The notes beneath the pieces were generated by a model, which worked only from the letters and a program-made list of their open reading frames with translations, made no database searches and was not told the origin of the DNA. The position numbers and the translations under genes are program-made. This document shows positions 2 to 42,757 of a stretch of DNA of 64,000 nucleotides, piece after piece (the stretch's first letter is position 1; the number at the start of each line of letters is the position of its first letter). Location: positions 124,001-188,000 of the IMG/VR virus record IMGVR_UViG_3300042010_000106; one strand, given 5' to 3'.

Positions 2-190
2 ATGCCGCGTGCTGACGTGAAAAGCTACGACGCCGAAGATCGTTTCGCATATGTTGAAGAATTCTGGAAGCTTGTTGAACAAGTCGAAGGACTCAACAAA
101 GACACGATCAAAAAGATTGTGGAAAACAAAGTGTGTTCCATTGGCATGATTAACGGCAAGCCTGTCGCCATCGACTACGGGATTATCTAA
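2..190 (+). CDS. C-terminal part of a protein-kinase-like phage protein (probably begins upstream of the window)
   Basis: Ends ENKVCSIGMINGKPVAIDYG, resembling the catalytic-loop/DFG-like (DYG) region of small phage kinase-fold proteins. Confidence 0.4.
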   Translation: MPRADVKSYDAEDRFAYVEEFWKLVEQVEGLNKDTIKKIVENKVCSIGMINGKPVAIDYGII

Positions 191-838
191 ATGAATCGTC
201 CAACTCCTTACCGCCCACGTGTGCCGGATGACCTGTTTGAAGAGCTGAAAAAATTCAGCGACGGCACATTCAAAGGTTTGCATGAACTGACGCTGCGCTA
301 CATTCGCGAAGGCATTGAAAAAGATCGCGCTGTGCAGGCTGGCAAAGAACGTAAAGTTCCCGGCAACGGGTATTTCCCATTCAGTGATGTCACGATCAAC
401 AATTGGGCAAAGTATTACGGCATCGACGTGATGGAAGTTGCAGCCGCTTACCACGCAATGGAACATATCGCGCTCGATAGCGTTGATCGTGTGAACGGTG
501 AATTCAGTCTGGACGGCCACGACATCAAAGGTTTGAACAAATTCTTTTTCGGCGACAATTGGGAAAAAGACATGCTGTTGCGCCAACTGGCTGCAATCGA
601 CGCTGCTGCAAATCACGTTGTAGGTGCAGCGACAGAAGAGCGACCGGAAGAAAGATCAGATATTACCGTGGCGATTCTTGCGGAACGTTTGTCTGTTCGT
701 GCTGCTGAAATCATCAAGTTCATGTTCAAGCGCGGCACACCGGCCACCATGCACCAATTGCTGAGTGATGCAGAAGTCGAACTCGTTACCAACGCAATGC
801 AGGTCGTTCCAAAACTCGCCAAACGGACAAAGAAATGA
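191..838 (+). CDS. RHH/Arc-like protein with C-terminal IF2 N-terminal-like domain
   Basis: N-term YRPRVPDDLFEELKKFS..LHELTLRYIREGIE has an RHH pattern. C-term ITVAILAERLSVRAAEIIKFMFKRGTPATMHQLLSDAEVELV matches the IF2_N repeat pattern. Confidence 0.6.
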   Translation: MNRPTPYRPRVPDDLFEELKKFSDGTFKGLHELTLRYIREGIEKDRAVQAGKERKVPGNGYFPFSDVTINNWAKYYGIDVMEVAAAYHAMEHIALDSVDRVNGEFSLDGHDIKGLNKFFFGDNWEKDMLLRQLAAIDAAANHVVGAATEERPEERSDITVAILAERLSVRAAEIIKFMFKRGTPATMHQLLSDAEVELVTNAMQVVPKLAKRTKK

Positions 839-26984: not shown

Positions 26985-27000
26985 GATTTATTCCCCTTGA

Positions 27001-28626: not shown

Positions 28627-31600
28627 TTAACCACCTTGCAGCAACCATTTGACCGGGCCATTGTTGAATATTTCACAAATAAACGATTTGTCTACATCCA
28701 ATGTGTAAACGTAACCGTTGTATTTCATGCCAATGTGAACACCAGCAAAATTCTCTGTGAAAGCTTCAATGTCTGACAACGAATCAAACCCTTTGTACAA
28801 CGAAGCAGGGCCGATTTGGTTAACCGATTGCATATCAAGGAATGGTTTCAGATTATAGACACCGTTTTTCGCAGTGGTTTTAATCGGCGTTACGTCAAAC
28901 AGTGCGGTTTTTTCCGAACGTTTAATGGTTGGGCTTCGTTCAGCATATGCGGAATAGTTTTGCATCCACAAAGAAGTCGTGCCGAAATAACCCTGTTGCG
29001 GGCCGTTGATTGCCAGCGTTTCCCGTTCTGTATATTCGCTATGGCCGGAATTTGCATCCACGCCGTCAGCACCAAACATTCCGTAATACGTTTGAGTGTG
29101 CAAAGCAACATCCGTTGGAATTACCCAATGGCCGGTGCCCTGTGCCACGCTACGTTCCCACAACATTCCCGAAAGAACGCTATAGGCTTTGGTACTCATT
29201 GGTTCCATATCAAACAGAATGGTTGTGCTGCTACTTGGAACAGCGACATAAACCACTGTGTAATGGACTGAATGATCGACAGCGTAATACACATATTCAG
29301 TATCAACGTTTCCGTAACCCGCCTTTTGATCGACGAATTCAGCAGCGTTGTAATCCCCGTAATAAGCTTGGGTGAATGTGGTATCCAATTCGAAATGTGC
29401 GTAATTCGTTGACAGCAATGTAACGCCGCTGCTTGCAAAGTACGACAGACCCGAACCACTGCGAACATCGTAGGAAGTTTCAACATTTCCATACAAAGCT
29501 TTTGTGTCAATGAAATCAGCTTGTTTGAAATCGCTGGTTTGTGCTTTCAGTGTGCCCCAAGTCACAACGTTTTTCACGTCGGTACTCAATGCCTGCACGT
29601 AATCCCAAACGACAGTATCGGAAACTTTCGACAACGCTTTCGACATGTCCCAACCAATTGTTACTTCTGCAATCCGTGTGTTAACACTCGTTTTTTCCTG
29701 AATCAAATCAACGAGACTACCGAACAGGTTATGCACCGCCTCTGTAGTGAGTTGCACAAGTGACATCAAAGCTTTCGTCACAAAGGATTGCAATGCAGCC
29801 GCGCTAAACCCTGTGCGCGATTGCAGCCACGACGGTGTGATTTTCGAACCGTAGTAAGCTTGTGTATGTTTCGGCACCAATACAGGCTGGTTGATATTCC
29901 AGCTACCAACCAACAAACGCGCTGTCTCGCCGTTCTCTTCGTAGTAGGCATAAACCGGCATTGTTTTCTGCCAGTAGTTTGTCACGCCGCCATGAATGTA
30001 AACGCGATCATTGTTTTGCACGTTTGCAACAATGCCACTTGGAACACCGTTGATTACCAGATGCGTCCCTTCTGCGAAATAACCCTCAATTTGAATCTTG
30101 CAATTCGGCGGAACCGAAGATGCACGACCAATTGCAGAATCATACAGTTGGAAACGAATCGGATTATCCAGTGTACCGAAATTCAACCAGAAAATGGTCG
30201 GTGTTTCTGCGACCAAAAACAGTTCCGAAACCTGCGTCAAACGATACGGGCTACGTGCTGTTTTCTGGAGAACCAATTGTGCAGTTTGTGTGGTTGCCGT
30301 TCCGCCAATCTTTTCCTTCTGCAAAACCAATTCAGAAGTTTGTGTGATGTTCATGCCTGTAGGCGGCGCATCATAGACCAGCGTTGCGTAAACGTTCGCT
30401 ACCTGCATATCAGGAACGGACGTATCTTTCACCAGAACCAATTCAGCAACTTGTGAGGTGCGAATAGGGCCGAGTGCACTTTTCTGCAAAACAAGTTCAG
30501 CAGTTTGTGTAACGGTTGTTGCAGCAATAGCCGATTTGGTCAGAAGTAATTCAGACAATTGCGTTGTGGCAAATCCGAAACCAGATTCAGTTTCGAAAAT
30601 AAACACGGCGCCGGGATTACCTACGTCGTATTGTCCAGTTGCAGGCGCGCGACCACCACCGGGAACCTGAATATCAATTGTGCCGCTCGCAATATCGTCA
30701 CCAGAAAGGATGAACATTGCAGTAGAACCTGCACCACCCGGCCACGCAGAGTTGTTAATGCCGTCACCAGCACCTTGAACACCACCACCAGACCAACCGT
30801 AATTGCCCACAACACCAGAACTATTTGGACTGGCAAAGTTTGAACCACCGGGGCCGTTTGTTTGGTAAATCGTTTCGGCATTACTTGTGAAAATACCACC
30901 ATCACCAGCATTACACGGATACTGACCAGACGTACCAGACATAATCCGATAACTAGAAGAACCAGAACCAGCAGTGAACGTTTTCGCGCCTATGCTGACA
31001 ATTGCAGGATCGTTCGGAACCGATGCTGAAGGGCCTGTGTACGTGTTTACCGTACCACCGCCTGCACCAGTCATAATCACGTAAACGTATTTGGTACGCG
31101 GACGCAATTTGTGCACATAGTTTTGCTTTGTTCCCAACCCTTGACCGATAAAATTTGTGCGGTAAATACCGACAAGTTCAGCCGTCAAATTGTTGTAGTT
31201 TGGAAACAGTGGAACGATGGGCCTTTCAAAAACTACAGAGCCTTTGAATTCGTAAATGACGACAACGCCGTCACCACCTTTACCGCCCGGTGCACCACCA
31301 GAACCACGCAAACCATTTTGTGCAGCCGCTACAGTTTGGCCACCGGCTTGACCAATACCACCAGCACCAACGTGAACGTTTAAAACTTTTGGAATTATGT
31401 AGGCTTGTGCAAGGCGACCAGAACCACCAGAAATAGAACCTGCTTGGCCGAAGTTGCCGAACGTAATCGACGCGATACCCAACGTTCCGACAGAGCTATC
31501 AACTTTAGTTAAAACGAGAGTTTGATCACCTGTAGTTGCGAGGGTGTATGTGCGCGAAAAACCACCTGAAGAAGCGGTAGCACCGTCAATGGCATTACCA

Positions 31601-33285
31601 TTGAGTGTAACTGTGAATTGCGTTGTGCCTGTGCTGTTATACGGAACCGTTAATTGCTGTCCTGCAAAACCTTTGAAGTTGAGCGTTACGGAATCATTTG
31701 CAGCAGAAACAGACAAACCATAAGTCGCGTTTCGTGCCGCATTACCCGTATAAATCGGCGTCAGTTGTAACGCGCCTGCGCCAGTAAATGTATTGAGTGC
31801 TGCTGTAGCTGGCAGGTTTGTTTGTTGCGCAACCATTGTGAAAGCCGCACCAACCGTTCCCGTAAGGAAAGATTGCGCACCAGCCACGGTATTTGCACTC
31901 GCGCTTGTACCGCCTGCGCGTGAGCCTGTATCAACTTCACGTAGCCAATCAATACCTTTATTGAAAGTTGCAACACCGCCGCCTGATACGCCTGTACCAC
32001 CGGGAGCAGTTAAAAACAAACCTTCTGTTGTAGCAATTGTGGAAGCGCCGCCATTCAACGTGGAATCGTTCTGTGTAACGGTTCCGTTTACGTTCATGTT
32101 GGTGCGGCCACCAGAACCAGCCGCTTGAACGATTGCTAAAACTAACGTTGTGTCAGCAGCCGGGGTGAAAACAAAATCACCGGGCGTATTGTATTCAGTA
32201 CGTACCCAACTTGCGGGCGTTGCACTGAATGGCAAAACAGGAACGATTGCAGGAGGTTTAGGGTTCAAACCGTCTGCACTTGTTTGCACTGGCCCGTAAA
32301 CACTTAATTCCATCAAACGTGTACGATCAAGCCCGCCATTGTTGTAACCCATGATGCTGGCGCCGAAATCGTTTGTCCACGTACCCCAAACAGAACCAGA
32401 AGGCCCATCGGCTGGAATCAAAAGTGTGTTTACTTTGCCGCGACCCCACGGAACGCCGAGGTCATCGGTTGGTGTAACCGTAACGTCAATCAAACGGTGA
32501 ACAGTGAAATCGCCTTTTACCGTTGGCGTACCGTTTGAATAACCGAGTGCAATTGTTTTACCCCACGAATAAAAATAGAACTCAACTTTTCGTGGTTTTA
32601 TTGGGCTTGGAAATTGAAGCGCAACCCAATCAATAATAGCGTTTGCACCAACGTTACCACCAGACCAGCCGCTTGCAGTGTTGCCATCGTTTACCGCTGC
32701 AACTGTACCGAAATCGTTGTATTGCGAAGAGCAAATAGCTGTGCCAATTTGCTTAGCCCATTCAGGTTCTAATGCGTTGACGCCTCTGACAACTACTTCG
32801 TTGATACTGAGGTTTGTGTTAGCACTGCCCGGTGTATTCGTAAGCGCACTGAAACTGTTGCTGTCACTGTACAGAACTATGCCGGGAATTTGTGAAGCGT
32901 TAACAAGAAAACGTAAATTCGTGCTGACGTTGATTACGCTGCCATCTGCATCAGTCTGTCCGTTTACGGTGTAGCTTTGCAGCGGAATAATATCTGCCTT
33001 TGTAAAACTTGCAGACGCAGGATCGGCACCTTGTGCCCACGTACCAATGCGAATGCTGTTACCCCAAGACGCGAAGTTGATTACGATGTCTTCTACGTTT
33101 TTCGGGCCTACAAATTTGATACCAACAAAGTTTAAAAGCGATGTTGTTGCGTCTACGTTCGAACCAATCCAGCGCCGACCATCCGCCAAACCATCATTGA
33201 TTGACGATGGCGCATAGTTCACGTTGTTACTGGAGTACCATACGTTTTTATCGCAAAACGCTGTCCCAATTATTTCTGTTGCCAT
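28627..33285 (-). CDS. Large fibre protein: two discoidin/F5-8C-like domains, Gly-rich domains, TQxxELxL repeats
   Basis: CSSQY..VNDGN..W..DWVALQF; GAGG/GGKGGDGVVVIYE; six ~17-aa repeats. Confidence 0.75.
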   Translation of the reverse strand: MATEIIGTAFCDKNVWYSSNNVNYAPSSINDGLADGRRWIGSNVDATTSLLNFVGIKFVGPKNVEDIVINFASWGNSIRIGTWAQGADPASASFTKADIIPLQSYTVNGQTDADGSVINVSTNLRFLVNASQIPGIVLYSDSNSFSALTNTPGSANTNLSINEVVVRGVNALEPEWAKQIGTAICSSQYNDFGTVAAVNDGNTASGWSGGNVGANAIIDWVALQFPSPIKPRKVEFYFYSWGKTIALGYSNGTPTVKGDFTVHRLIDVTVTPTDDLGVPWGRGKVNTLLIPADGPSGSVWGTWTNDFGASIMGYNNGGLDRTRLMELSVYGPVQTSADGLNPKPPAIVPVLPFSATPASWVRTEYNTPGDFVFTPAADTTLVLAIVQAAGSGGRTNMNVNGTVTQNDSTLNGGASTIATTEGLFLTAPGGTGVSGGGVATFNKGIDWLREVDTGSRAGGTSASANTVAGAQSFLTGTVGAAFTMVAQQTNLPATAALNTFTGAGALQLTPIYTGNAARNATYGLSVSAANDSVTLNFKGFAGQQLTVPYNSTGTTQFTVTLNGNAIDGATASSGGFSRTYTLATTGDQTLVLTKVDSSVGTLGIASITFGNFGQAGSISGGSGRLAQAYIIPKVLNVHVGAGGIGQAGGQTVAAAQNGLRGSGGAPGGKGGDGVVVIYEFKGSVVFERPIVPLFPNYNNLTAELVGIYRTNFIGQGLGTKQNYVHKLRPRTKYVYVIMTGAGGGTVNTYTGPSASVPNDPAIVSIGAKTFTAGSGSSSYRIMSGTSGQYPCNAGDGGIFTSNAETIYQTNGPGGSNFASPNSSGVVGNYGWSGGGVQGAGDGINNSAWPGGAGSTAMFILSGDDIASGTIDIQVPGGGRAPATGQYDVGNPGAVFIFETESGFGFATTQLSELLLTKSAIAATTVTQTAELVLQKSALGPIRTSQVAELVLVKDTSVPDMQVANVYATLVYDAPPTGMNITQTSELVLQKEKIGGTATTQTAQLVLQKTARSPYRLTQVSELFLVAETPTIFWLNFGTLDNPIRFQLYDSAIGRASSVPPNCKIQIEGYFAEGTHLVINGVPSGIVANVQNNDRVYIHGGVTNYWQKTMPVYAYYEENGETARLLVGSWNINQPVLVPKHTQAYYGSKITPSWLQSRTGFSAAALQSFVTKALMSLVQLTTEAVHNLFGSLVDLIQEKTSVNTRIAEVTIGWDMSKALSKVSDTVVWDYVQALSTDVKNVVTWGTLKAQTSDFKQADFIDTKALYGNVETSYDVRSGSGLSYFASSGVTLLSTNYAHFELDTTFTQAYYGDYNAAEFVDQKAGYGNVDTEYVYYAVDHSVHYTVVYVAVPSSSTTILFDMEPMSTKAYSVLSGMLWERSVAQGTGHWVIPTDVALHTQTYYGMFGADGVDANSGHSEYTERETLAINGPQQGYFGTTSLWMQNYSAYAERSPTIKRSEKTALFDVTPIKTTAKNGVYNLKPFLDMQSVNQIGPASLYKGFDSLSDIEAFTENFAGVHIGMKYNGYVYTLDVDKSFICEIFNNGPVKWLLQGG

Positions 33286-33330: not shown

Positions 33331-35346
33331 TTAGAACGTACCGTTTGCAGTACCCGGAGGTGTAATGGTTACGCCACGCGGATTCGACAGCCGAATTTGT
33401 ACCGTTTTCTGTGGCGGATTTGGAACGTCTGTGCCGATGATCGTTACGGGGATTTGTTTCTCAGATTCGCCCGCTTCAAACATCATTGTGCCGCTCGCTG
33501 TTTCGTAATCTGGTTCGCCGAAATCGAACACCATATCGGTGAATGCAGAACTTGCTTGCGAGTAAGTGAAGAAGCCGAAATTGCAGCTTGTGTTAAACAC
33601 TGCCAAATCAGGATCGGTACTCACGTTGCAAGTAAGCGGCGTTGCGTCCAGAACATCAGAACCGAACGGCGTTGCAAACGCACGCAGAACAGGGCCGTCA
33701 CGATCAATTTTCACCGTGGAATATGCGCCCGACCATGCGTGACCAGTTGCACCGATATCAACTTCAGAAATCACTTTGATTACGACATTGTTTCTTACGT
33801 AAGAAAGTTGGAAGTTTTTCGATGTCGAACCAGCAGCCATACCACCTTGGTTACGGTTTGCAACGATCATGTGGTTTGCGCCAGCATCACGAACAAATGC
33901 CAACACCAGACCCATTGCATCGTCGTCCGCATCGGTAGAACTGAGTTTCGCTTGTGCCGAGAAGAAGTTGAAAGCATTCGGACTCAACAACGAAACGTAA
34001 TTACCGCTGTTTTTAATCGACTCAATATGATCGCCAGTCAGCACCATATTGTTCGCGTCATCGGCGGCAGGAATTTGCATACCCGGCAGATAAAGCGCTG
34101 CACCAGAAGCATGCGACCAGTTCTGATAATTGTCGTAGGTATTTGGAATCGGAATTCCTGAACCTTTCGCATCATTCGAAACGGTTTCCCAATCAACCAA
34201 ACATGTGCGTTTTGCAGCAGTGTTCAACACAAGATCATAGAACATGACGTTGGTTGTTGCAGGATCATCAGGACGCACAGCAGTTGTATCGTAAACCTGT
34301 ACAGCGGAGAACGGTTCGGTATCCAGCAAAACTACGCGCCAGTTGAAATCTACATCCGCAACCGCTTCACCAAATGTCACAGTAAACGAACCGGTTGTTG
34401 TGCCTTGATCGGTGCTAGTTGCAAGCACGTACGATTGTGCGCCGGAATATTTGTTGAAACTGATATACACGCGTGGAAGCCGTGCAGTTTCACCGTCAAA
34501 TTCATAGGTAATTGTCAGCGCTTGAACAGGCGCAACCGATTTGAATTCGCCGTAAACTTCCAACGTTGCATCATTCGTTTCGAGCGTGTGATATTCACCT
34601 ACACGCGGATCAGCATTTTGTCGCGGGTTATTTGTGAACAATGCAGAAACACCGGGCGGGCCTTGAATACCTTGACCGGGTGCGCCTGTTTCGCCTTGCG
34701 GGCCTTGTTGACCTTGCAAACCGCGTTCGCCTTGTGGGCCAGTCGGGCCTATTGGGCCATTCAAACCAGTTTCACCGATTTGACCTTGTGGGCCTGTTGC
34801 GCCTGTCAAACCTTGCAAACCTTGTGGGCCGGTTGGGCCTTGTTGTCCGGGTGTTCCTTGTGGGCCTAATTGACCTTGTGGGCCAGTCGGGCCGGTTGGG
34901 CCAATGCTACCGGGCAAGCCTTGTGCGCCTTGCGGGCCTGTAGGGCCAACGGGGCCACGCGGGCCGATACCACCATAACCACCGGCAGGGCCAGCGGGGC
35001 CGACATCACCTTTAGGGCCAATACATCCCATCGGGCCGTCGCGTCCGTCTTTGCCGTTGCGACCATTTAAACCTTGCGCACCTTCAGGGCCAGTCGGGCC
35101 AGTTGCACCAACACCAATATTATTTACTGTTGGAAAACCTTCGGAACGAATTACAGTTCCGTCAGTATTTGTAATTGTGAAAACGCCAGTTTCTTTATCG
35201 TAAACCGCAGTTTTTACGCCACCTTGTGCCGCCGTTTCGTCGGTACTCGGTTCAAATTCAACGCCCGTATCTTTCAGCACTGCGCCCGGTACAGAGCGAG
35301 ACGTGCTAATCATCGACGGTGGTACTTTTGTTAATCCGCCAGCCAT
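33331..35346 (-). CDS. Collagen-like fibre protein with Calx-beta and thrombospondin-C-like lectin domains
   Basis: 48 contiguous Gly-X-Y triplets; [26 protein letters not shown] (Calx-beta); [11 protein letters not shown]. Confidence 0.85.
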
Positions 35347-35392
35347 AAAAATATTCCTTAAAATTGCCCTCCATTTCTGAAGGGCGAATTGA

Positions 35393-38300
35393 TTAGCTCA
35401 TGCCGGAAAAATCGAGGTCAGACCATTTCCCTTTCCAGCCAGCAGCGGCAGTGCTATAAATAACCTGTCCTGCTTGGTTGTAAAGTGTGAACCAGCAATA
35501 GTTCGGATTCTTCGATTTCAGGTTGTAGCAACGAATGTGCATTTTTTGCGGGCCTGCTTCCAATGCAAACAATCCGCCAGCAGTGGAAACAGCTTGGCAG
35601 CCTACATAAACGCCGAGCTGGTCATCTGCACCGCCTACAACGTAATACAAACCATCCGCTGGAATGTTGATATCACGTTCTGCACTCCACCAATTGTAAT
35701 TCGGGCCACCACTTCCGATGCTTGGGGAAATGTGAATCACTGTGCGACCGCCGTAAAACGATTGATAAAGTGGAACACCTACAGTGCCCGCAACAACATC
35801 ACCAATTGCAGAAGCTTGTCCCGGCAGACCCGGCAACGAAACAGAAACGGCTTGACCTGCGCCATTCAAAATTGCCCAGTTACACCACGCAACGTTACCG
35901 CCTGTGTTGCGATAAATAACTGTGATTGGAACTGCACCGCCCGGATGCGCAAAAGTGAATGTATCAATATCTCGCCAGTTCGAATTTTTATCGCGAATGT
36001 GATTACAGTTGACGTAGAAACTTGCAACGTCGTCCGCAGTCCATTTAACGGTGTATGTTCCGGCTGGAAGGTTTGGTGTGTACTGCAACGAATAATTGAT
36101 TCCGTTTGGCTGGCTTCCGTTTCCGTGCAAAGAAGTCCGCACTTGTACGCTGCCATAACCAACCGTGTAGTTTGTAGAACCACCACCGCCACTTTGTTGC
36201 TTCTCAATTGTGTTGCCACTAATCAAGCAAGAAGTAGCGAATTGATTACACGTTGGTTTCACACCGCCGTTGATAATACGTCCGCGCCAATCCGCAGCAT
36301 TCGACGAATAAATAATCTGATTCGAAGGATCGAGAACACACATTGAAGCATATGCGTTCCGACGACCACCGCCCGCCGATTGATAATTGATGAACAAATG
36401 ACGTGTGCCACGATTCACCGCTGTACGCACACGGGTTGCACGTGCGACAGAACCACCACTCGACTGCGCGATCAGATTACAATCCATGTAAAGCTGTGCA
36501 CCATCTTTGCCGAAGAAAATGAACGTATAAATACCCGAAACCGGGAACGTCATTTCTCTTTCCATCACGTACGAAGCACCGCCGTAAGAAGCGAGCGCTT
36601 TTTGTACGAACATTCGGCGAGACAAACGGTTTACGAATTCACACGCGCCACCATCGTTAACCGCTACCAAAGTCGCTTGATCACACTGGTAATTGTTTTC
36701 GTTGATGATTGTTCCGATTGCCGCAGGACGTTCAGCTTTCACACCAGTCAGGTTATAAATCTCAACCTTGAACTGTACGTTCGGCCCCATCAAATCCGTG
36801 CCGCAAATTGGAACGCAAATATCAATGCCATTTTCAGAGCATGCAGGAATGTGCCCGGTGCTTTGAGTTTTGTTGTAATCGGCGCCGTAGTTCAGCGGTT
36901 CTGGTACAGGTTCCGAAGTCAGCGAGCCTGTTTTAGAACGCCATTGATATGCGGATGCGTTCGTTGCAAATACAACCTGTCCGTTTCCGAGGATCGCACA
37001 CTTAACCCAACCCGGTGTGCAATGCGGAACGTTTTGATACATGATCGAAAGTGTTTGCAGACCTTTACGACCGACAAAGTTTGTTTGCTGGTTTGCTTCC
37101 CACGTCGAAGATTTTTGCACCTTCAATTCGCAATCCAGATAGATGTAGCAGTTATCGTCCGCTGTTCCGATCCACGTATAAACGCCGTCGTAAGGCAGAT
37201 TGATTTCTGTTTCCATCACGTAATACTGACCACCTTGCGCGCAGTTGTAGCCGTGAGCTTGCGAGCAAATTCGATAAGCACCATAACCGCCAATGTTTAC
37301 GTCGTTTGTCGAGTAGGCAAATTGCACACCAGTTTCAGACAAAATGTCGCAATAAAGCGAAGGTGTAATCGAGCCGGGAATAATGCAATCACCCTGCGCT
37401 TCAATTGCATCGAGTGGCGTTGTTTTGAAACTGAAATTCACGTCACGCGGAGTGCGGTGATTCAAACGTGCGCGGAAACACAGGTAATTCACTTGACCTT
37501 TCTTCAGACGAACTTTCGAACCGTCGTCGATGATCAAACGTGCAAAAGGAACCGGGCAACTAACTGTCATTGCCCAATCAGGGCAGCACGGGCCGAGAAC
37601 ACGCACGTGAATTGTCGTACCGTTTTTCGGATAGAATTCAAAGTAGAAACGCTGGTGGCCACTTACAAATCCATCAGTACCACCGACCACGATATCATTC
37701 GGGTAGGTGCCTTGATAAAAGATCATTTGCACAGGATCAGCAGCAAAGAATTCTACGACGACATCGCCTTCTGCTTTGCCTGAATAATCGTAGTAAATGT
37801 CGTTGTATTGCGCGCCCTGTCCGACTTGTGCGTAAACAGGATCGAGCGTTGGATTCAACGGCAAACACAAAACGTCGTCCGGCACTGGCATGCAGAACAT
37901 TGGAAACACCCGGCTACCGCGTTGCTCAGGGCAGTAGATCGAATATTGCCATTTGTTGTAATTGCGTGGTGCATCGTAACGAACAATAATGAAATCATCG
38001 CCGCCGACGCTAGTGAAATTGAACGGAATGGAAATCGCCGAATATTGATTCGTACCAGAATTCAAACTGGCTGCTTGTGCAATCATTCCGCCGTTGTAAA
38101 ACACAGAAACGGTAACAGGCGCCACGCCCTGAACAGTCAGGTCAATGTGCATGATACCGTTGGCGGGAATTCGATGTACCATTTCGTAACTTGCTGCACC
38201 GGGAACAACGCGATGATCTTCATTTACGCGGCATGGCAGGTTAGGGCCAAATGTTCCGAAGCATGGTGCTGGGCGTTCATAGTTCGTCAATTGAACGACG

Positions 38301-39004
38301 TTTACTTCGCCCAATTTGATTCGCCACCGCGCATTCGCAGGAGCATCAACACGAACGGTTAGGAAATTGTTTGCAGGACGCGGAACACCGCAATCAACTT
38401 CACGCAATTCAGGTGGTTCGGCATTGTAGAAAATGTTGAAGTAATTGCCGCTGGTTTTGCTATCACCAAGCAATTCGCAACCGTGATAAATACGGAAACG
38501 AACACCGGGATCTAATTCAAGTGCGCTAACGTCAATTGCACCCGATGCAGAACCAGCCCAAACCAACATTTCATTTATTTCTGCTGTTTCACCATACAAC
38601 GTAACGGGCAATGCCTCGGCTACAGCGTTTGGCAGCAATGGTGCGGTTGCAAAGAAACGACCGCCAGCCACATCAAAATTTGGTGTGTGTCCTGTATATG
38701 TTTTCGGTGCCAATCCGTCGCAGGTTGAAACCAAATAGCCAGTTGGGCCACCGGTTTTAAATTCCCCGCTATCAAAATCTCCCGCGTAACCCGGCCAGCA
38801 TTCAACCATTTCTTCAGGTGGGCAATAGTCAACGCCGCTATCACATTCAATCGTTAACCAATATTCATTTGAACCATGGCGAACGCGCAAATCGTTAACC
38901 GGATCAATTCGAAACCACGTCCCATCATCCTGATAAACATTCCATTCACTTTCACAAATGTCCAGATTGGCATCTTGTGGAGTGCGTATGGTCAACTGAC
39001 TCAT
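35393..39004 (-). CDS. Cys-rich adhesin-like protein with Calx-beta and four PA14-like domains
   Basis: AAGGA RBS before ATG 39004; [36 protein letters not shown] repeats. Confidence 0.8.
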
Positions 39005-39031
39005 AGCAATTTCCTTCGGTTTTAATATGTT

Positions 39032-39040
39032 TAAATTACC
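39032..39040 (-). promoter_or_regulatory. GGTAATTTA candidate late promoter
   Basis: Follows a terminator hairpin; 28 nt upstream of the ATG. Confidence 0.55.
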
Positions 39041-39041
39041 G

Positions 39042-39073
39042 AAAAACAACGAAAGGGGCGCAAAGGCCCCTTT
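39042..39073 (-). terminator. Intrinsic terminator
   Basis: AAGGGGCCTTTGCGCCCCTTTCGTTGTTTTT on the minus strand. Confidence 0.7.
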
Positions 39074-39100: not shown

Positions 39101-39619
39101 TTACGGTTTCACCCACAATGTTCCGGGTTTTACGTAACTGCCTTCCGCTTGGCTTGGGTCTTCGCTTTGAATAAAGATTTGAACAAATCCGTCTTCGCCA
39201 CGTGGCCCCGGTGTTCCTTGTGGCCCCGGTGGGCCTTGAATACCTTGTGGCCCGCGTGGGCCTTCAGGGCCGACATCACCGCGAGGGCCTGCTGGGCCTT
39301 GGCAACCGGTTGGCCCTTGTTCACCATCACGACCATCTGCACCGTCAACACCATTCATTCCGCTTAAACCACGTGGGCCAGCGGGGCCTTGCACAATGCT
39401 ATTCGTTGTAAAAAATCCATCAACTTTAATGAATGTGTTATCACTCAATGTCAGTTGAAGAACGCCTGTCAATTGTTCCAAATGCCCGCTAACCAAAACA
39501 GGACTTTGTGATTCATCCTGTTCGGCAACTTGCAAACTTGTACCCGTGTTTTTCAGGTTTGCACCAACGCGACCGCGTGCACGAACCATTTCCACGGGCA
39601 CCCGTGTTAACTCACCCAT
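39101..39619 (-). CDS. Collagen-like protein (about 22 triplets)
   Basis: Gly-X-Y run; C-term [10 protein letters not shown]. Confidence 0.85.
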
Positions 39620-39631
39620 AAAAATGCTCCT

Positions 39632-40258
39632 TTAACCGCAGTTATAATCGGCGTTTGGATTTACCCAAAGCATTCCGTGCACGCGTGCTTCTTCTGCCGG
39701 TTCAACCGTTGAAACAACGATATTCATAAAACCTTCAGGGCCACGCGGGCCGGGTTTACCTTGTGGGCCTTGATCACCACGCGGGCCTTTCGGGCCTTGT
39801 GGCCCTTGTGGGCCGGTGGGGCCTATTGGGCCTTGCAAACCTGTTGGGCCGACAGGGCCAGTTGGGCCGATTGGCCCCGGTTGACCAGTGCGACCGGTTT
39901 CACCTTTCGGGCCTGTTTGTCCAATTGCACCTTGAGGGCCAGCACAACCGGGGCCACCGGCTGCACCATCGCGACCATCTTTTCCAATTTTCCCATCCTT
40001 TCCCGCTAAACCTTGTGGCCCCGTAGGGCCTGCTGGAATTTTGTCTGGAGTAGGAAAACCCGAAGTGCGAATTTCTTGGCCGTTCGCGAAACGCAGAGTT
40101 AAAACACCCTGCGAAGCGTCGAACAACATTGAAGCAACTTCTGAAACTTCCGTATCTTTCGGCGAAGTGGCGGCAAGTCGTTCGTTCTTAACTTCAAGAA
40201 CGCTCGAATCTTTTTCACCCTTTGCACGAATCATCGGCGTTGGGATTTTCGTTAGCAT
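39632..40258 (-). CDS. Collagen-like protein (about 33 triplets)
   Basis: Gly-X-Y run; C-term VEP..GMLWVNP. Confidence 0.85.
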
Positions 40259-40270
40259 TTCTGCATTCCT

Positions 40271-42757
40271 TTAGACTTTGTACTTAACCGTGTACGATTC
40301 GCTCAGCGTTCCGCCTTGCAGTGCTGTGTCTTCCTTCTTACGAATCAGCCAATCACGTTCGCCTGTACCGTCATCGTAACGAACAGTAAGAATTTCAGGA
40401 AGATTTGGATCGTATTCAGGGTAGTCCGGGCCGTTAGGGATAATGTCATTACGCAACGCAACACCTTTCCACGTAACAGGAAGGTCTAAAGGCAACACAC
40501 GCAATTCAACGTCTGGCCCTGCGCGCTTATCCCACATCAAATAGATGTAATCGTCTGCTGGTGCAACCGTATCTATTTGAATAGTCGTCGTGCTATTTGG
40601 GACGATTGTGTTTGTCATTACCTTATCGGCAAAGTCCTGAATGCCTGTCCAACGCGTGTAAGGTTTTCCGTATGGTGTTATGTTCGAATTCACGCCGTAA
40701 TCGCGTTCTTCTTGCGTAATTTCCGATTCAATCGGGCCACCAGTGAACAAACGGTTAGCAAACATTGCAACGCCCCAACGCGCAGGACGAATAGGAACTT
40801 CAGTCACTGGCATACACACACCGTCGTAAACTTTCTCTGACGTTGTTGTGGTGCCATCGCTCCATTCTGTGACTGTCCAAGACGCTGTGACAAACGTATC
40901 ACCGCCCGGAACACCACCACTCGTTTGACCCGGTTGGCAATTCACTACTTCAGTAAATGGCGTAACTGTTACAGGTACGATCGGTGTTGCACAATACACT
41001 TTGATTTTAAATGTTCCTGTGCCAGAACTAACAGCACGCAGGCCATCAACTGTACGCAGAATCAATTCAAAATTTTCAGTGGCCGTGGACGTTTTGACAG
41101 TGGTGTTACCCACACGCCACGCAATGGAAACGGAACCGGTTATTTCTACTTCGAATTTCACGTGACCGCGAATGTTTGGAATCGCAAAATCTACGATTAC
41201 GCTATCGCCGCCGTTGAATTGTGTCAGTGGATCGTTGCACGGCAAATGGTTGATTGCCGGACATGTCGCGTTAATCGTCAACTGTTGGTCAGTTGTTAAC
41301 GAAACGATTTTAACCACGCCAGTGCCTGCGTAAAAGAACGTGATGTTTTGGCCCATGCCTTGGAGAACACCGTCTCGATATACAGATACGTCGAGGTTTG
41401 TTGTAATCGTTGTATTTCCCGGCGAGCTGCCGTAACGAACGACCGTATTTGAGAAACTATCAACTGTTTTTTGAGTGCCACAATCCATTACCTCTTCGGT
41501 CGGAATTCGTACCGGGCAAGATGCGCGCATACGGTAATCATTGCCGCGACTTTTGATCACGAAAGAAACGTCTTTATCTACAGCGAATTCGTACGAACCG
41601 GATTCAGTAATTGTTTGAACCACTGTGTGTTCGACAGTTACAGGCGTTCCAGTTAACACGATATCCAGAATCGTCGTGCCATTTACGCCGCCCATGTCGA
41701 GCGTAACGTTTGACCAGCCGGGGAATGTTTCGAGTGTTGTTCCGCAGCTATCCAAAACGTCAGTCGGATCAGGATCGGGCGCGTTGTACGGGCATTTCAC
41801 TTTGACGCTGATTGCACCGTAACCCGTGGTTTCAATTGTCACTTTCCCTTTATCGGGATCGAAGTCATACGAGAATGTCACAGTGCCCGCGTGATTCGAA
41901 AGGACGTAAAAAGGAACGTTGTTTTGACGGAATTCAACACGCACCGTTTCAACTAGCGTTACTTCAATATCAATCGTACCAATTTCTACAGGCAGTTTAA
42001 CTTCCACGCTGCGCGGTGCTTCGTACGCGTATGGTTCTGCACCACACGTGAATTCATACACCGGAACTTCTGGATCAACTGGAATGTATGGGCAAGTGAA
42101 AATGTAATCGACAGAGCCGGTGCCCTGCGTGGTTGCATAAACATCGCCCAATGCCGGATCGTAGAAAAAACTAAACGTTCCGTCACGGTTGGAAGTAATC
42201 GTTTTCAGCAAAGTTTTGTCTTGGAAGAAACGAACTTCTGCTGTGCCAATCACTTCCCAAATAACTTCAACAAAACCCGGTTCATCGCCGAGCAAAATTG
42301 TGTTCTTTTTTACGTATCCTGCTTGGTGCCATTGCTTCCCGCATTTGATCGACGTTTCTTGCAGCGGTGGCGGCTTAACGTTGTTGGGAAGACACAAACT
42401 TTCAGGACAATCCACACGGACATGCACGCGACTGTTAACGCTGTTGCCTTCGTGCGTGATAATGATTTCGTCATTACCGGGTTTTTTATCCAGTGGCGCA
42501 TATTGAAACGTGAACGAACCAACGGCATCGTCCAACGGCGCAGCGGCCACAATTTCATCGAATTGGTGAACGTATAAAGCGTCTTCCGGCGTGTCCCGTT
42601 CATACCAAATAACAACGGGGGCCTGAATCGTTCCCAAAAATAATGAAACTGAGTGCTTTCCCTTACCGCAAAACGTAATCCATTTGCCGCATTCAGCAAT
42701 TGTTTTCGCTACGGGTACGGGGGATTTCGCTACGACTGGAATAGTCGTACAAAGCAT
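40271..42757 (-). CDS. Structural protein with about six Cys-bracketed beta-sandwich repeats
   Basis: Repeats begin xCG and end xCP. Confidence 0.75.
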   Translation of the reverse strand: MLCTTIPVVAKSPVPVAKTIAECGKWITFCGKGKHSVSLFLGTIQAPVVIWYERDTPEDALYVHQFDEIVAAAPLDDAVGSFTFQYAPLDKKPGNDEIIITHEGNSVNSRVHVRVDCPESLCLPNNVKPPPLQETSIKCGKQWHQAGYVKKNTILLGDEPGFVEVIWEVIGTAEVRFFQDKTLLKTITSNRDGTFSFFYDPALGDVYATTQGTGSVDYIFTCPYIPVDPEVPVYEFTCGAEPYAYEAPRSVEVKLPVEIGTIDIEVTLVETVRVEFRQNNVPFYVLSNHAGTVTFSYDFDPDKGKVTIETTGYGAISVKVKCPYNAPDPDPTDVLDSCGTTLETFPGWSNVTLDMGGVNGTTILDIVLTGTPVTVEHTVVQTITESGSYEFAVDKDVSFVIKSRGNDYRMRASCPVRIPTEEVMDCGTQKTVDSFSNTVVRYGSSPGNTTITTNLDVSVYRDGVLQGMGQNITFFYAGTGVVKIVSLTTDQQLTINATCPAINHLPCNDPLTQFNGGDSVIVDFAIPNIRGHVKFEVEITGSVSIAWRVGNTTVKTSTATENFELILRTVDGLRAVSSGTGTFKIKVYCATPIVPVTVTPFTEVVNCQPGQTSGGVPGGDTFVTASWTVTEWSDGTTTTSEKVYDGVCMPVTEVPIRPARWGVAMFANRLFTGGPIESEITQEERDYGVNSNITPYGKPYTRWTGIQDFADKVMTNTIVPNSTTTIQIDTVAPADDYIYLMWDKRAGPDVELRVLPLDLPVTWKGVALRNDIIPNGPDYPEYDPNLPEILTVRYDDGTGERDWLIRKKEDTALQGGTLSESYTVKYKV

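What the first reader, a model, noticed from the sequence alone, without database searches (positions are those of the whole stretch)
33334..37540. Two adjacent genes insert different lectin domains into the same loop of a Calx-beta domain
Seen: in 33331 the Calx-beta N-half (..[13 protein letters not shown]) is separated from its C-half ([16 protein letters not shown]..) by about 210 aa containing [11 protein letters not shown], which resembles the thrombospondin C-terminal L-lectin. In 35393 the N-half (..[15 protein letters not shown]) and C-half ([20 protein letters not shown]) flank a PA14-like domain. In canonical Calx-beta the 'T.dgtA..g.DY' segment is contiguous. Inference: Calx-beta serves as a display scaffold for swappable glycan-binding cassettes.
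Basis: partly seen in the sequence, partly recalled or inferred. Interest (0 to 1): 0.6.

Follow-up and report, generated by a model that had tools for sequence, protein, structure and literature searches.

The report
Split Calx-beta domains displaying lectin cassettes
Two neighbouring tail-fibre genes of a 312-kb jumbo phage each interrupt a Calx-beta beta-sandwich at the same loop with a sugar-binding-type domain, and related phages carry different domains at that same spot, so the loop seems to act as a swap-in socket for host-recognition modules.

Summary
Gene A (33331-35346, minus strand, 671 aa) is a collagen-like fibre. Gene B (35393-39049, minus strand, 1218 aa as listed) is a large tail-module protein. 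Each holds one Calx-beta domain whose chain is broken between strand C and the DY motif.

- **Fold.** In AlphaFold2 models the two halves close into one sandwich. It superposes on NCX1 CBD1 at Z 15.2 (A) and 15.3 (B), with 106 and 110 of 116 residues aligned.
- **Sequence.** With the inserts removed in silico, the halves match a canonical Calx-beta profile end to end: 61.6 bits (A) and 32.1 bits (B).
- **Insert A** (216 aa) has a concanavalin-A-like fold. The best matches are the thrombospondin C-terminal domain and CBM66, both Z 16.4.
- **Insert B** (172 aa) is PA14/CBM67-like and keeps the Asp-Asp calcium/sugar motif. Three further PA14-like domains follow it.
- **Swapping.** In syntenic gene-B orthologues the same loop holds PA14, a ThuA/GIFT-like domain, ConA, or ConA plus ThuA-like (the last in phage PaBG gp248). 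Homology breaks exactly at the loop.
- **Beyond phages.** A bacterial type-1-secreted adhesin also has two Calx-beta repeats split at this loop.

The principle is the "split domain" of RTX adhesins. What is new is the Calx-beta scaffold, the split site and the phage setting. Glycan binding is inferred, not shown.

The parts
33331..35346 (-). Gene A: 671-aa collagen-like tail fibre protein (P0001). Orthologue of Lu11 gp243, annotated 'tail fiber protein'.
   Evidence: ORF. Pfam Collagen 4.5e-20 and PHROG tail-fibre families. 36.6% identity to Lu11 and 40.9% to HRDY3. Lu11 annotation.
35116..35346 (-). Gene A N-terminal domain, aa 1-77. It is shared with three small collagen-like proteins encoded upstream and is presumably the attachment end.
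   Evidence: The same PHROG tail-fibre family (8745, about profile 1300 onward) matches the N-terminal region plus collagen repeats of 33331-35346, 39101-39619, 39632-40258 and 42768-43565. The attachment role is inferred.
34651..35115 (-). Gene A collagen Gly-X-Y repeats, aa 78-232. Predicted triple helix, hence a trimer.
   Evidence: Pfam Collagen, 3 stretches. The family profile matches collagen chains in the PDB.
34315..34650 (-). Gene A middle region, aa 233-344, between the collagen repeats and the Calx-beta. Not modelled here.
   Evidence: Conserved in the 14 homologues of alignment A1. No family assigned.
34168..34314 (-). Gene A Calx-beta N-half, aa 345-393 (strands A, A', B, C).
   Evidence: AF2 strands at fragment 14-17, 31-40 and 48-55, block pLDDT about 90. 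Canonical HMM positions 8-58: weak in P0001, up to 18.8 bits in homologues.
33520..34167 (-). Gene A insert, aa 394-609: concanavalin-A-like (thrombospondin-C / CBM66-like) jelly-roll domain nested in the C-D loop.
   Evidence: VIA-align 2rhp_A Z 16.4 (186 aligned) and 4b1m_A CBM66 Z 16.4 (155 of 165, rmsd 2.5); legume lectins and ERGIC-53 at Z about 12.6-12.8. Foldseek agrees. Sub-threshold Pfam TSP_C hit in relative P0078.
33334..33519 (-). Gene A Calx-beta C-half, aa 610-671 (strands D, E, F, G). The protein ends with strand G.
   Evidence: Pfam Calx-beta profile 54-100. Canonical HMM 62-118, 42.0 bits. AF2 strands at fragment 284-289, 295-303, 314-323 and 332-336.
35393..39049 (-). Gene B: large tail-module protein (P0002, 1218 aa from the listed TTG). 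The true start is probably the ATG at 39004. Orthologue of Lu11 gp242 and homologue of PaBG gp248.
   Evidence: ORF. Homologues begin at MSxLTIR, which is aa 16. 46-52% identity to Lu11 and HRDY3. Annotations.
37562..39004 (-). Gene B N-terminal region, aa 16-496. Cysteine-rich, no assigned family, conserved across orthologues whatever insert they carry.
   Evidence: 31% identity to P0082 (E 2e-59) and 34% to the L013 orthologue (E 3e-86) up to the Calx N-half. Invariant Cys columns.
37406..37561 (-). Gene B Calx-beta N-half, aa 497-548.
   Evidence: AF2 strands at fragment 20-23, 26-29, 36-45 and 53-61. Canonical HMM positions 14-63 in orthologues, up to 15.2 bits; not detected in P0002 alone.
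36890..37405 (-). Gene B insert, aa 549-720: PA14/CBM67-like beta-sandwich nested in the same C-D loop. It keeps the Asp-Asp (TADD) motif.
   Evidence: VIA-align 8vjh_B Z 12.8, 2okx_B Z 11.3, 6kbj_A Z 11.2, 3w5n_A Z 11.1. The family profile hits PA14 protein 6qdi at E 0.0085 in this stretch. 47% identity to the non-nested third PA14-like domain of the L013 orthologue.
36692..36889 (-). Gene B Calx-beta C-half, aa 721-786.
   Evidence: Canonical HMM 61-122, 11.7 bits in P0002 and up to 33.7 bits in orthologues. AF2 strands at fragment 245-250, 258-265, 274-284 and 292-298.
35426..36589 (-). Gene B: three further, non-nested PA14-like domains (aa 821-928, 956-1071, 1119-1208). The first has KD in place of the Asp-Asp motif.
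   Evidence: The HMM of the nested insert hits these at 42.1, 47.5 and 36.3 bits. Pfam PA14 29.4 bits at 833-876. The family profile matches phage Chi Dit (E 7e-7) and MpPA14 (E 0.004).

Best explanation
Genes A and B encode virion tail-fibre or baseplate-fibre proteins of a Lu11-like jumbo phage. In each, a Calx-beta beta-sandwich acts as a 'split domain'. The chain makes strands A-C, leaves through the C-D loop to fold a complete ligand-binding-type domain, then returns to make strands D-G.

The inserted domain is ConA-like in A and PA14-like in B. The C-D loop lies at the end of the sandwich opposite its N-terminus, so the inserted domain should project from the distal end of the stalk with its own termini tucked together.

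Gene A is a collagen trimer and would present three ConA-like heads at the fibre tip. Gene B presents one nested and three tandem PA14-like domains. Three of the four keep the Asp-Asp motif that in PA14 lectins holds the sugar-binding Ca2+.

The most likely function is multivalent, low-affinity binding of host surface polysaccharide during adsorption. Because the two half-domains are conserved while the loop content is not, the loop behaves as a recombination socket. Among orthologues its content has been replaced by PA14, by a ThuA/GIFT-like domain, by ConA, or by ConA plus ThuA-like.

Shown here: the split fold (in models and by profile), the insert folds, and the replacement of inserts among orthologues. 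Inferred: glycan binding, Ca2+ dependence, projection geometry, and a role in host range.
For: Fold of the halves:
- Model 1 has pLDDT 83 and pTM 0.82. It matches Calx-beta structures 3gin_A (Z 15.2), 3fq4_A (15.0), 3ead_A (14.9) and 8sgi_A (14.7), each with 103-106 residues aligned at rmsd 1.6-1.7 A across model range 11/13..337.
- Model 2 matches 3gin_A (Z 15.3), 8sgi_A (15.0), 3ead_A (14.6) and 3fq4_A (14.4) across range 17..302.

Sequence:
- N- and C-half hits to a canonical Calx-beta HMM are colinear in 30 or more homologues.
- Insert-deleted constructs score 32-112 bits end to end.

Insert folds. The DcisD motif and its Ca2+/sugar role are described in PMC8092209. The motif TADD aligns with that of MpPA14.

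Swapping:
- Orthology of the flanks comes: P0002 aa 16-549 aligns to P0192 aa 1-523, and aa 724-1217 to aa 755-1261. The insert has no colinear partner.
- P0002's insert is 47% identical (E 5e-37) to the non-nested third PA14-like domain of that orthologue.
- Synteny with upstream collagen genes holds in L002, L003 and L020.
- In a tree of the scaffolds, A, B, P0082 and L013/L014 lie on one side of a 96/90 branch against bacterial repeats.

Context: two tail sheath paralogues, a baseplate-wedge-like protein, a tail protein and collagen fibre genes surround the pair. Lu11 gp243 and PaBG gp248 are annotated as tail fibres.

Precedent: ligand-binding domains, PA14 included, project from split Ig-like domains in RTX adhesins (PMC12077191, PMC10865825).
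Against: - No experiment shows that these proteins are in the virion or bind sugar.
- All structural evidence is predicted. Model 2 is only moderate (pLDDT 68, pTM 0.42), so the orientation of its insert is unknown.
- I could not inspect coordinates. The projection geometry rests on general beta-sandwich topology.
- The ConA-like fold also houses glycanases; GH16, PL7 and GH43 C-domains appear among the matches.
- ConA-like and PA14-like folds can mediate protein-protein contacts.
- The ThuA-like assignment rests on sub-threshold Pfam scores (15.9-30 bits against a cut-off of 33.4).
- The scaffold tree has only 114 columns, and four split scaffolds (P0083, P0139, P0087, P0187) are not resolved from canonical repeats.
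Confidence: 0.72

Rival explanations
1. The inserts are enzymes rather than lectins. The ConA-like insert of gene A would be a glycanase or lyase (GH16, PL7 or 3-keto-disaccharide-hydrolase type) that degrades capsule or EPS, and the Calx-beta merely holds it.
For: GH16 carrageenases and laminarinases, PL7 alginate lyase and DUF1080 'glycosyl hydrolase' structures match insert A at Z 11-13. There is a weak Pfam GH16 hit in gene B at aa 963-1025, E 0.013.
Against: The best matches are non-catalytic modules: thrombospondin C-terminal domain and CBM66 at Z 16.4, lectins at Z about 12.6-12.8. No glycoside-hydrolase family reaches its Pfam cut-off. I saw no GH16-type ExDxxE motif around the conserved DADDDA segment, but I did not examine this in detail.
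Confidence: 0.1
2. The inserted domains make protein-protein contacts within the virion, such as fibre-to-baseplate or fibre-to-fibre docking, and do not touch host glycans.
For: Close structural relatives sit in phage baseplates or tail tips: phage Chi distal tail protein (Z 12.8), mycobacteriophage Douge baseplate (Z 12.2) and TM4 gp23 (Z 11.7). Gene B has a large N-terminal region of unknown function.
Against: Several of those baseplate domains are themselves receptor-binding or carbohydrate-binding modules, for example TM4 gp23 and the phage J-1 evolved Dit CBM2. Three of four PA14-like domains keep the sugar/Ca2+ Asp-Asp motif. Rapid replacement of the loop content among orthologues fits a host-facing role better than a conserved assembly interface.
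Confidence: 0.13
3. The different inserts are independent insertion events into unrelated Calx-beta domains (convergence on a permissive loop), not replacement of cassettes within one inherited split scaffold.
For: A bacterial T1SS adhesin (P0119) has two Calx-beta repeats split at the same loop by a different ConA-like subfamily, so the loop is permissive in general. The scaffolds of P0083, P0139, P0087 and P0187 do not group firmly with A and B.
Against: Gene-B orthologues are colinear and syntenic on both sides of the loop while the loop content differs. The PA14 insert has its closest relative in a tandem domain of an orthologue of the same protein. Scaffolds A, B, P0082 and L013/L014 share a 96/90 branch.
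Confidence: 0.15
4. The split Calx-beta is a modelling or alignment artefact. The N-side strands belong to another beta domain, and the C-half is a degenerate remnant.
For: In P0001 and P0002 themselves the N-half is barely or not detected by the HMM: 0.9 bits and none. Pfam reports only half a domain below its cut-off.
Against: Two independent models give near-complete superposition on five or six solved Calx-beta structures at rmsd 1.6-2.1 A. N-halves score up to 39.5 bits in relatives. Insert-deleted constructs give single full-length hits. The pattern recurs in 30 or more sequences.
Confidence: 0.03

Closest known systems
Split Ig-like domains of RTX (type-1-secreted) adhesins: MpIBP, FrhA, AhLap (Davies laboratory; PMC12077191, PMC10865825; Graham et al. 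2024 Proteins, cited there)
   Same: A discontinuous beta-sandwich from which a complete ligand-binding domain buds and to which the chain returns. The guests include PA14-type sugar-binding domains, which the gene-B family profile matches weakly by sequence (MpPA14 E 0.004, Lap 6m8m E 0.027). The proposed role is to project the binding domain away from the stalk. A T1SS adhesin found here (P0119) uses Calx-beta repeats split at this very loop.
   Different: The described RTX split domains are BIg-like and split after the first strand (12 aa, then 106 aa). Here the scaffold is a Calx-beta split 3(+A')/4 in the C-D loop. The proteins are phage virion fibres, one of them on a collagen triple helix, not secreted bacterial adhesins. 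Replacement of guests among orthologues is documented here.
'Evolved' distal tail proteins of lactic-acid-bacteria siphophages, with carbohydrate-binding modules inserted into a Dit domain (e.g. phage J-1 Dit CBM2, PDB 5ly8)
   Same: A phage host-recognition protein that carries a nested carbohydrate-binding module. 5ly8 matches insert A structurally (Z 10.9; Foldseek E 1.5e-5).
   Different: The host domain is different (the Dit galectin-like domain, from my own knowledge of that literature, not tested here). The protein, the phage group and the insertion site also differ.
Calx-beta domains of Na+/Ca2+ exchangers and integrin beta4 (PF03160; 3gin, 3ead, 3fq4, 2lt9)
   Same: The same seven-strand sandwich (Z 13.7-15.3, rmsd 1.6-2.4 A). 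The ...TA / DY... signature flanks the C-D loop.
   Different: Those domains are contiguous and bind Ca2+ through acidic residues of the A-B, C-D and E-F loops and a C-terminal DDD (established knowledge of NCX CBD1). Scaffolds A and B lack most of these residues and carry a 172-216 aa domain in the C-D loop.
PA14 domains as inserts in other proteins, and CBM67 within GH78 rhamnosidases (3w5n, 2okx)
   Same: PA14/CBM67-type sandwiches often occur as insertions in a host domain (my own knowledge of the PA14 and CBM67 literature). CBM67-bearing chains match insert B at Z 11.1-11.3 over chain residues 132-267 and 3-156.
   Different: The host domains there are glycoside-hydrolase domains, not Calx-beta, and the proteins are enzymes.
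ConA-fold lectin domains (Laminin G3, SPRY) on jumbo-phage tail fibres, noted by Iyer et al. 2021 (PMC7824862)
   Same: That survey reports concanavalin-fold lectin domains associated with tail fibres of jumbo phages. The ConA-like module of gene A also occurs un-nested in AR9 g012, PhiPA3 gp235 and Phosso gp121.
   Different: The paper contains no mention of Calx-beta or PA14, so it does not describe the nesting.

Membership tests
Calx-beta (PF03160) | Seven-strand Greek-key beta-sandwich superposable on solved Calx-beta domains | tested here: met
   Gene A: 3gin_A Z 15.2, rmsd 1.6, 106/116 aligned; 3fq4_A Z 15.0. Gene B: 3gin_A Z 15.3, rmsd 1.9, 110/116 aligned. These are predicted models, not experimental structures.
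Calx-beta (PF03160) | Sequence match to the family profile above the curated cut-off | tested here: inconclusive
   Intact proteins: gene A 21.4 bits against a cut-off of 27, C-half only; gene B no hit. The genome search finds only gene A, below cut-off. Against a canonical HMM built here, insert-deleted constructs score 61.6 and 32.1 bits over nearly the whole profile. The Pfam model itself could not be run on those constructs.
Calx-beta (PF03160) | Contiguous domain with an uninterrupted ...TA..G.DY... C-D loop | tested here: not met
   216-aa and 172-aa domains interrupt the loop. This is the variant feature.
Calx-beta (PF03160) | Acidic Ca2+-binding residues (A-B loop Glu, E-F loop Asp/Glu cluster, C-terminal DDD) | tested here: not met
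   In the alignment to the canonical consensus, P0001 and P0002 have GTD plus non-acidic residues in the E-F loop and no terminal DDD. P0083, P0139, P0087 and P0187 keep DDD. The identity of the Ca2+ ligands is from established knowledge of NCX1 CBD1.
PA14 (PF07691) | Profile match above the curated cut-off | tested here: inconclusive
   The whole protein scores 29.4 bits against a cut-off of 24, but through the domain at aa 833-876. The nested domain alone scores 13.1 bits, E 0.084. The nested domain's HMM hits the three later domains at 36-48 bits, so all four are paralogous.
PA14 (PF07691) | Two consecutive Asp residues (DcisD) that hold the sugar-binding Ca2+ | tested here: met
   TADD, TADD and GADD are present in the nested, third and fourth domains; the second has KD (sequence). 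The motif aligns with that of MpPA14. Its role is described in PMC8092209. The cis peptide itself cannot be tested here.
PA14 (PF07691) | PA14-type beta-sandwich fold | tested here: inconclusive
   The best structural matches are phage Chi Dit (Z 12.8), CBM67-bearing rhamnosidases and a fungal lectin (Z about 11). Classical PA14 structures are not among the 50 listed rows. They are reached only by sequence profile at E 0.004-0.03.
Concanavalin-A-like lectin/glucanase fold (TSP_C, Laminin_G_3, CBM66) | Jelly-roll sandwich superposable on members | tested here: met
   2rhp_A Z 16.4 (186 aligned), 4b1m_A Z 16.4 (155/165), 1ux6_A Z 15.1, 1ciw_A Z 12.8.
Thrombospondin C-terminal region (PF05735) | Profile match above the curated cut-off | tested here: not met
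   No hit for P0001 aa 394-611. Only relative P0078 gives TSP_C at E 1.6e-4, 21.9 bits against a cut-off of 25.6. The resemblance is at fold and motif level only.
RTX-adhesin split domain plus ligand-binding domain unit | Discontinuous beta-sandwich from which a ligand-binding domain buds | tested here: met
   for the phage proteins. The definition comes from PMC12077191 and PMC10865825.
RTX-adhesin split domain plus ligand-binding domain unit | Part of a type-1-secreted RTX adhesin, split after the first strand of a BIg-like domain | tested here: not met
   The genes lie in a phage tail module. The split lies after strand C of a Calx-beta. P0119, by contrast, is followed by OEP, ABC-transporter and AprE-type genes.

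The most novel reading that the evidence does not exclude
The Calx-beta C-D loop is a conserved, general-purpose docking port for ligand-binding domains. It is shared by jumbo-phage fibres and bacterial type-1-secreted adhesins. Recombination within the conserved half-domains exchanges whole binding cassettes, including copying a domain out of a tandem array into the loop, and possibly exchanging cassettes between phages and host adhesins. If so, the half-domains are natural homology arms, and the scaffold could be used to re-target phage receptor-binding proteins.
Probability: 0.3. Interest if true: 0.7.

Novelty: new variant of a known kind. Interest (0 to 1): 0.55.

Why it matters
Host recognition by jumbo phages is poorly understood. 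Lu11 gp242 is annotated 'hypothetical protein'. Standard annotation misses the architecture because a split domain scores as half a domain: Pfam gives 21 bits for gene A and nothing for gene B's Calx-beta.

Reading these genes as split Calx-beta plus guest domain has three uses:
- It gives exact domain boundaries for expression constructs.
- It marks the nested domains as the likely host-binding parts.
- It shows a natural site where binding modules have been exchanged among related phages, which bears on host-range evolution and on rational swapping of receptor-binding modules.

It also extends the 'split domain marks a ligand-binding domain' rule from RTX adhesins to phage fibres and to Calx-beta repeats.

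Tried and rejected
- Megablast of the two genes against 50,697 phage records found nothing. Protein-level search was needed.
- Pfam on the intact proteins does not see either N-half and gives no Calx-beta hit for gene B.
- PF03160 over the whole 312-kb genome finds only gene A's C-half. My own HMMs over all six frames of the genome find these domains only in the two genes.
- The exhaustive representative search was swamped by giant proteins with tandem Calx-beta repeats that match only the C-half. It was useful mainly as a source of canonical repeats and of the few insert-bearing relatives.
- P0018 and P0020, listed as covering 53% of the query, turned out to be ordinary tandem Calx-beta repeats aligned spuriously over the insert.
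- Sequence search of insert A against the PDB gave no lectin hit. Only fold comparison identified it.
- The protein-atlas feature search for the ThuA-like insert gave leads only, with GATase-like/GIFT clusters at score 0.90 and unrelated top rows.
- The atlas shape search found clusters covering both domains at TM 0.55-0.61, but I could not tell whether they are nested.
- Literature searches for Calx-beta with 'inserted' and PA14, or with phage tail fibres, found nothing relevant.
- AR9 g012, PhiPA3 gp235 and Phosso gp121 carry the ConA-like module without detectable Calx halves, so they are not filed as nested.
- Not used: complex prediction (the halves already superpose at Z 15, so a pass would not have changed my odds), the look-up of sequencing runs and read laying, and any alternative genetic code.
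- The insert-deleted constructs were made only inside scripts for HMM scoring and a tree. They were not sent to any other tool.

Full report
**1. What the window is**

The window is bases 124001-188000 of a 312,325-bp viral record with direct terminal repeats. It has no near-identical phage in GenBank by megablast. At protein level its nearest isolates are Pseudomonas jumbo phages HRDY3 and Lu11, at 37-52% identity for the two genes.

The two genes lie on the minus strand in a tail module.
- Two tail-sheath paralogues lie at 25938-28170 and a baseplate-wedge-like protein at 19440-22019.
- A tail protein lies at 48025-51246.
- There are four collagen-like fibre genes, gene A among them.
- In Lu11 the syntenic genes are gp242 ('hypothetical protein', = gene B) and gp243 ('tail fiber protein', = gene A).

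**2. The observation**

All residue numbers for gene B count from the listed TTG start.

Gene A (33331-35346, 671 aa, P0001) has an N-terminal domain (aa 1-77), Gly-X-Y repeats (aa 78-232), a middle region, and then the region in question.
- Pfam reports only profile positions 54-100 of 119 of Calx-beta, at aa 612-659. The score is 21.4 bits, below the 27-bit cut-off.

Gene B (35393-39049, 1218 aa from the listed TTG, P0002) probably starts at the ATG at 39004, because all homologues begin MSxLTIR.
- Pfam reports PA14 at aa 833-876 and no Calx-beta.

I built a canonical Calx-beta HMM from 250 contiguous repeats taken from giant repeat proteins found by the exhaustive search. Its consensus contains the uninterrupted ...YATADGTATAGSDY... 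segment.
- Against the two gene families it gives an N-half hit (profile about 8-59) and a C-half hit (about 60-120), in order, separated by 210-219 aa in family A and 170-177 aa in family B.
- The N-half is weak in P0001 (0.9 bits) and undetected in P0002. It reaches 18.8 bits (P0047) and 15.2 bits (P0039) in their homologues.
- With the insert removed in silico, each construct gives a single end-to-end hit: P0001 61.6 bits (profile 9-118), P0002 32.1 bits (26-122), others up to 111.9 bits.

**3. Fold**

AlphaFold2 used 15- and 19-sequence alignments.
- P0001 aa 335-671: pLDDT 83.1, pTM 0.82.
- P0002 aa 485-830: pLDDT 68.1, pTM 0.42, with the Calx halves and the insert mostly at 70-90.
- Both models have strands A, A', B and C before the insert and D, E, F and G after it.

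VIA-align against 48,161 PDB representatives superposes the split sandwich on solved Calx-beta domains across the gap.

| Model | 3gin_A (NCX1 CBD1) | 3fq4_A | 3ead_A | 8sgi_A |
|---|---|---|---|---|
| Gene A | Z 15.2, rmsd 1.6 A, 106/116, range 11..337 | Z 15.0 | Z 14.9 | Z 14.7 |
| Gene B | Z 15.3, rmsd 1.9 A, 110/116, range 17..302 | Z 14.4 | Z 14.6 | Z 15.0 |

**4. The guests**

Insert A (aa 394-609) is a concanavalin-A-like jelly roll.
- Thrombospondin-1 C-terminal domain Z 16.4 and CBM66 Z 16.4.
- Legume lectins and ERGIC-53 at Z about 12.6-12.8; phage J-1 Dit CBM2 at Z 10.9.
Pfam TSP_C is reached only by a relative, and below cut-off.

Insert B (aa 549-720) matches the phage Chi distal tail protein N-domain (Z 12.8), GH78 rhamnosidase chains over their CBM67-type region (Z 11.1-11.3) and a Pleurotus lectin (Z 11.2).
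- An HMM of this insert finds three more copies downstream in the same protein, at aa 821-928, 956-1071 and 1119-1208.
- A profile of the family reaches phage Chi Dit (E 7e-7), the MpPA14 lectin of the Marinomonas RTX adhesin (E about 0.004), PA14 protein 6qdi (E 0.0085, in the nested domain) and a Lap adhesin sugar-binding domain (E 0.027).
- The nested, third and fourth domains keep two consecutive aspartates aligned with the DcisD motif. In PA14 lectins this motif holds the sugar-binding Ca2+ (PMC8092209). The second domain has KD.

**5. Are the guests swappable?**

Relatives of gene B were collected from protein searches and from IMG/VR and mapped with the three HMMs. In every one of them the Calx-beta is split at the same profile position.

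| Loop content | Insert length | Where found |
|---|---|---|
| PA14-like | 170-177 aa | Lu11-like clade (ten IMG/VR loci, Lu11 among them) |
| ThuA/GIFT-like alpha/beta domain | 228-234 aa | L013, L014, P0187 |
| ConA-like | 242 aa | P0082 |
| ConA-like plus ThuA-like | 442-452 aa | P0083, P0139, P0087, and PaBG gp248 ('putative tail fiber protein') |

- The ThuA-like assignment rests on Pfam ThuA at E 7.6e-7 to 0.016, all below cut-off.

These are true orthologues or close homologues of gene B.
- The N-terminal 480-540 aa align at 24-34% identity (E down to 3e-86).
- The loci share the upstream small collagen genes.

The alignment of P0002 with the L013 protein (P0192) shows where homology breaks.
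- It runs aa 16-549 to aa 1-523 and stops at the end of the N-half.
- It resumes at aa 724-1217 to aa 755-1261, at the DY of the C-half.
- P0002's insert instead finds its best partner in the non-nested third PA14-like domain of P0192: 47% identity, E 5e-37, higher than the flanks.
- A domain that stands in the tandem array in one phage therefore sits inside the loop in another.

A maximum-likelihood tree of the insert-deleted scaffolds is short, at 114 columns.
- It puts scaffolds A, B, P0082 and L013/L014 on one side of a 96/90 branch against 40 bacterial repeats.
- The other four split scaffolds are unresolved near the base.
- This is compatible with one inherited split scaffold whose guest was replaced. 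It does not prove it.

**6. Beyond phages**

- Among 1,862 full-length canonical Calx-beta hits in 170 proteins, one giant protein (P0119, 3346 aa, about 20 tandem repeats) has two repeats split at the same loop by 182- and 197-aa inserts.
- The inserts give sub-threshold Laminin_G_3 and 3-keto-disaccharide-hydrolase (ConA-fold) matches.
- Its gene is followed by OEP, ABC-transporter and AprE-type membrane-fusion genes, so it is a type-1-secreted adhesin.
- The loop is thus a permissive site in general.
- The ConA-like module of gene A also occurs un-nested after Ig-like domains in many proteins, and in AR9 g012, PhiPA3 gp235 and Phosso gp121.

**7. Mechanism (inference)**

In a seven-strand sandwich the A-B, C-D and E-F loops and the C-terminus lie at the end opposite the N-terminus. 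This is general topology; the same end binds Ca2+ in NCX CBD1.
- A guest in the C-D loop therefore sits at the distal end of the stalk.
- In gene A the Calx-beta is the last domain, so a collagen trimer would carry three ConA-like heads at its tip.
- In gene B the nested PA14-like domain lies beside the exit to three more.
- I propose multivalent binding of host surface polysaccharide during adsorption. Ca2+ dependence would come from the PA14 Asp-Asp motifs and not from the scaffold, which has lost most canonical acidic ligands in A and B.
- Nothing here shows binding. The enzyme and protein-contact rivals remain open.

**8. Comparison with what is known**

- RTX adhesins project ligand-binding domains, PA14 included, from split Ig-like domains. 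The split is used as a marker of ligand-binding domains (PMC12077191, PMC10865825). There the split follows the first strand of a BIg-like domain.
- Phage 'evolved Dit' proteins carry nested carbohydrate-binding modules (5ly8 among the matches).
- A survey of jumbo phages notes ConA-fold lectins on tail fibres but does not mention Calx-beta or PA14 (PMC7824862).
- Searches for Calx-beta with 'inserted' and PA14, or with phage tail fibres, found no description of this arrangement.
- I therefore rate it a new variant of a known kind. The new elements are the scaffold, the split site, the setting, and direct comparative evidence of guest replacement.

**9. Limits**

- All structures are predictions, and I could not inspect coordinates.
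- The ThuA-like guest is not folded.
- The survey covers only what the capped searches returned.
- The insert-deleted constructs were used only inside scripts.

Noticed in passing
window 39004-39049 (minus strand): The listed TTG start of gene B at 39049 is probably too far upstream. All homologues begin at MSxLTIR, which corresponds to the ATG at 39004 (aa 16 of P0002).
   Followed up: partly
window 33331-35346, 39101-39619, 39632-40258, 42768-43565 (minus strand): Four collagen-like proteins (671, 172, 208 and 265 aa) share the same N-terminal region (the same PHROG tail-fibre family from about profile position 1300). Only gene A carries a large C-terminal head. They may attach to one site or form mixed trimers.
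   Followed up: no
window 35393-39049 (minus strand), whole of gene B: Gene B and its orthologues have many invariant cysteines, in the N-terminal region, in the Calx C-half (ICVPICGTD) and in the PA14-like domains. This hints at disulfides or metal sites in a virion protein. Unexplained.
   Followed up: no
window 36266-36589 (minus strand), aa 821-928 of gene B: The second PA14-like domain has KD where the other three have the Asp-Asp (DcisD) motif. It may not bind Ca2+/sugar.
   Followed up: partly
window 28627-33285 (minus strand): A 1552-aa protein lies just downstream of gene A. It has weak discoidin (F5/8 type C) matches at its N-terminus, Gly-rich stretches and a run of short repeats of the form TQ.AELVLQK. 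There is no PHROG hit. It is probably another fibre or baseplate protein.
   Followed up: no
window 40271-42757 and 48025-51246 (minus strand): The 828-aa protein upstream of the collagen genes looks built of repeated beta-rich units. Its C-terminus (aa 658-811) matches phrog_13325, which also matches aa 508-750 of the 1073-aa tail protein.
   Followed up: no
window 25938-26984 and 27001-28170 (minus strand): Two adjacent paralogous tail-sheath genes (phrog_12249, E 1e-104 and 1e-119). Lu11 has the same pair (gp246, gp247).
   Followed up: no
L019:7406-17446 (P0119): A 3346-aa adhesin followed by type-1-secretion genes, on a contig that also carries a Rep3 replication gene. It has about 20 tandem Calx-beta repeats, two of them split at the C-D loop by ConA-like inserts of 182 and 197 aa.
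   Followed up: partly
L013:6001-9792 (P0192 aa 524-751), L003:8001-12395 (P0187 aa 601-832), L021:644-4297 (PaBG gp248): A roughly 190-230-aa ThuA/GIFT-like (glutamine-amidotransferase-like) domain occupies the Calx-beta loop, alone or after a ConA-like domain. All Pfam scores are below cut-off. Its fold and role are untested.
   Followed up: partly
L002, L003, L020 (loci of P0083, P0187, P0082): In the phages whose gene-B orthologue carries a ConA-like domain, whether nested in the loop (P0082, P0083) or separate near the C-terminus (P0187), no gene-A-like 670-aa collagen-Calx[ConA] gene follows it (L020 ends about 0.8 kb downstream). In the Lu11-like clade, including L013 and L014, both genes are present. 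The gene-A head may derive from a gene-B-like ancestor.
   Followed up: no
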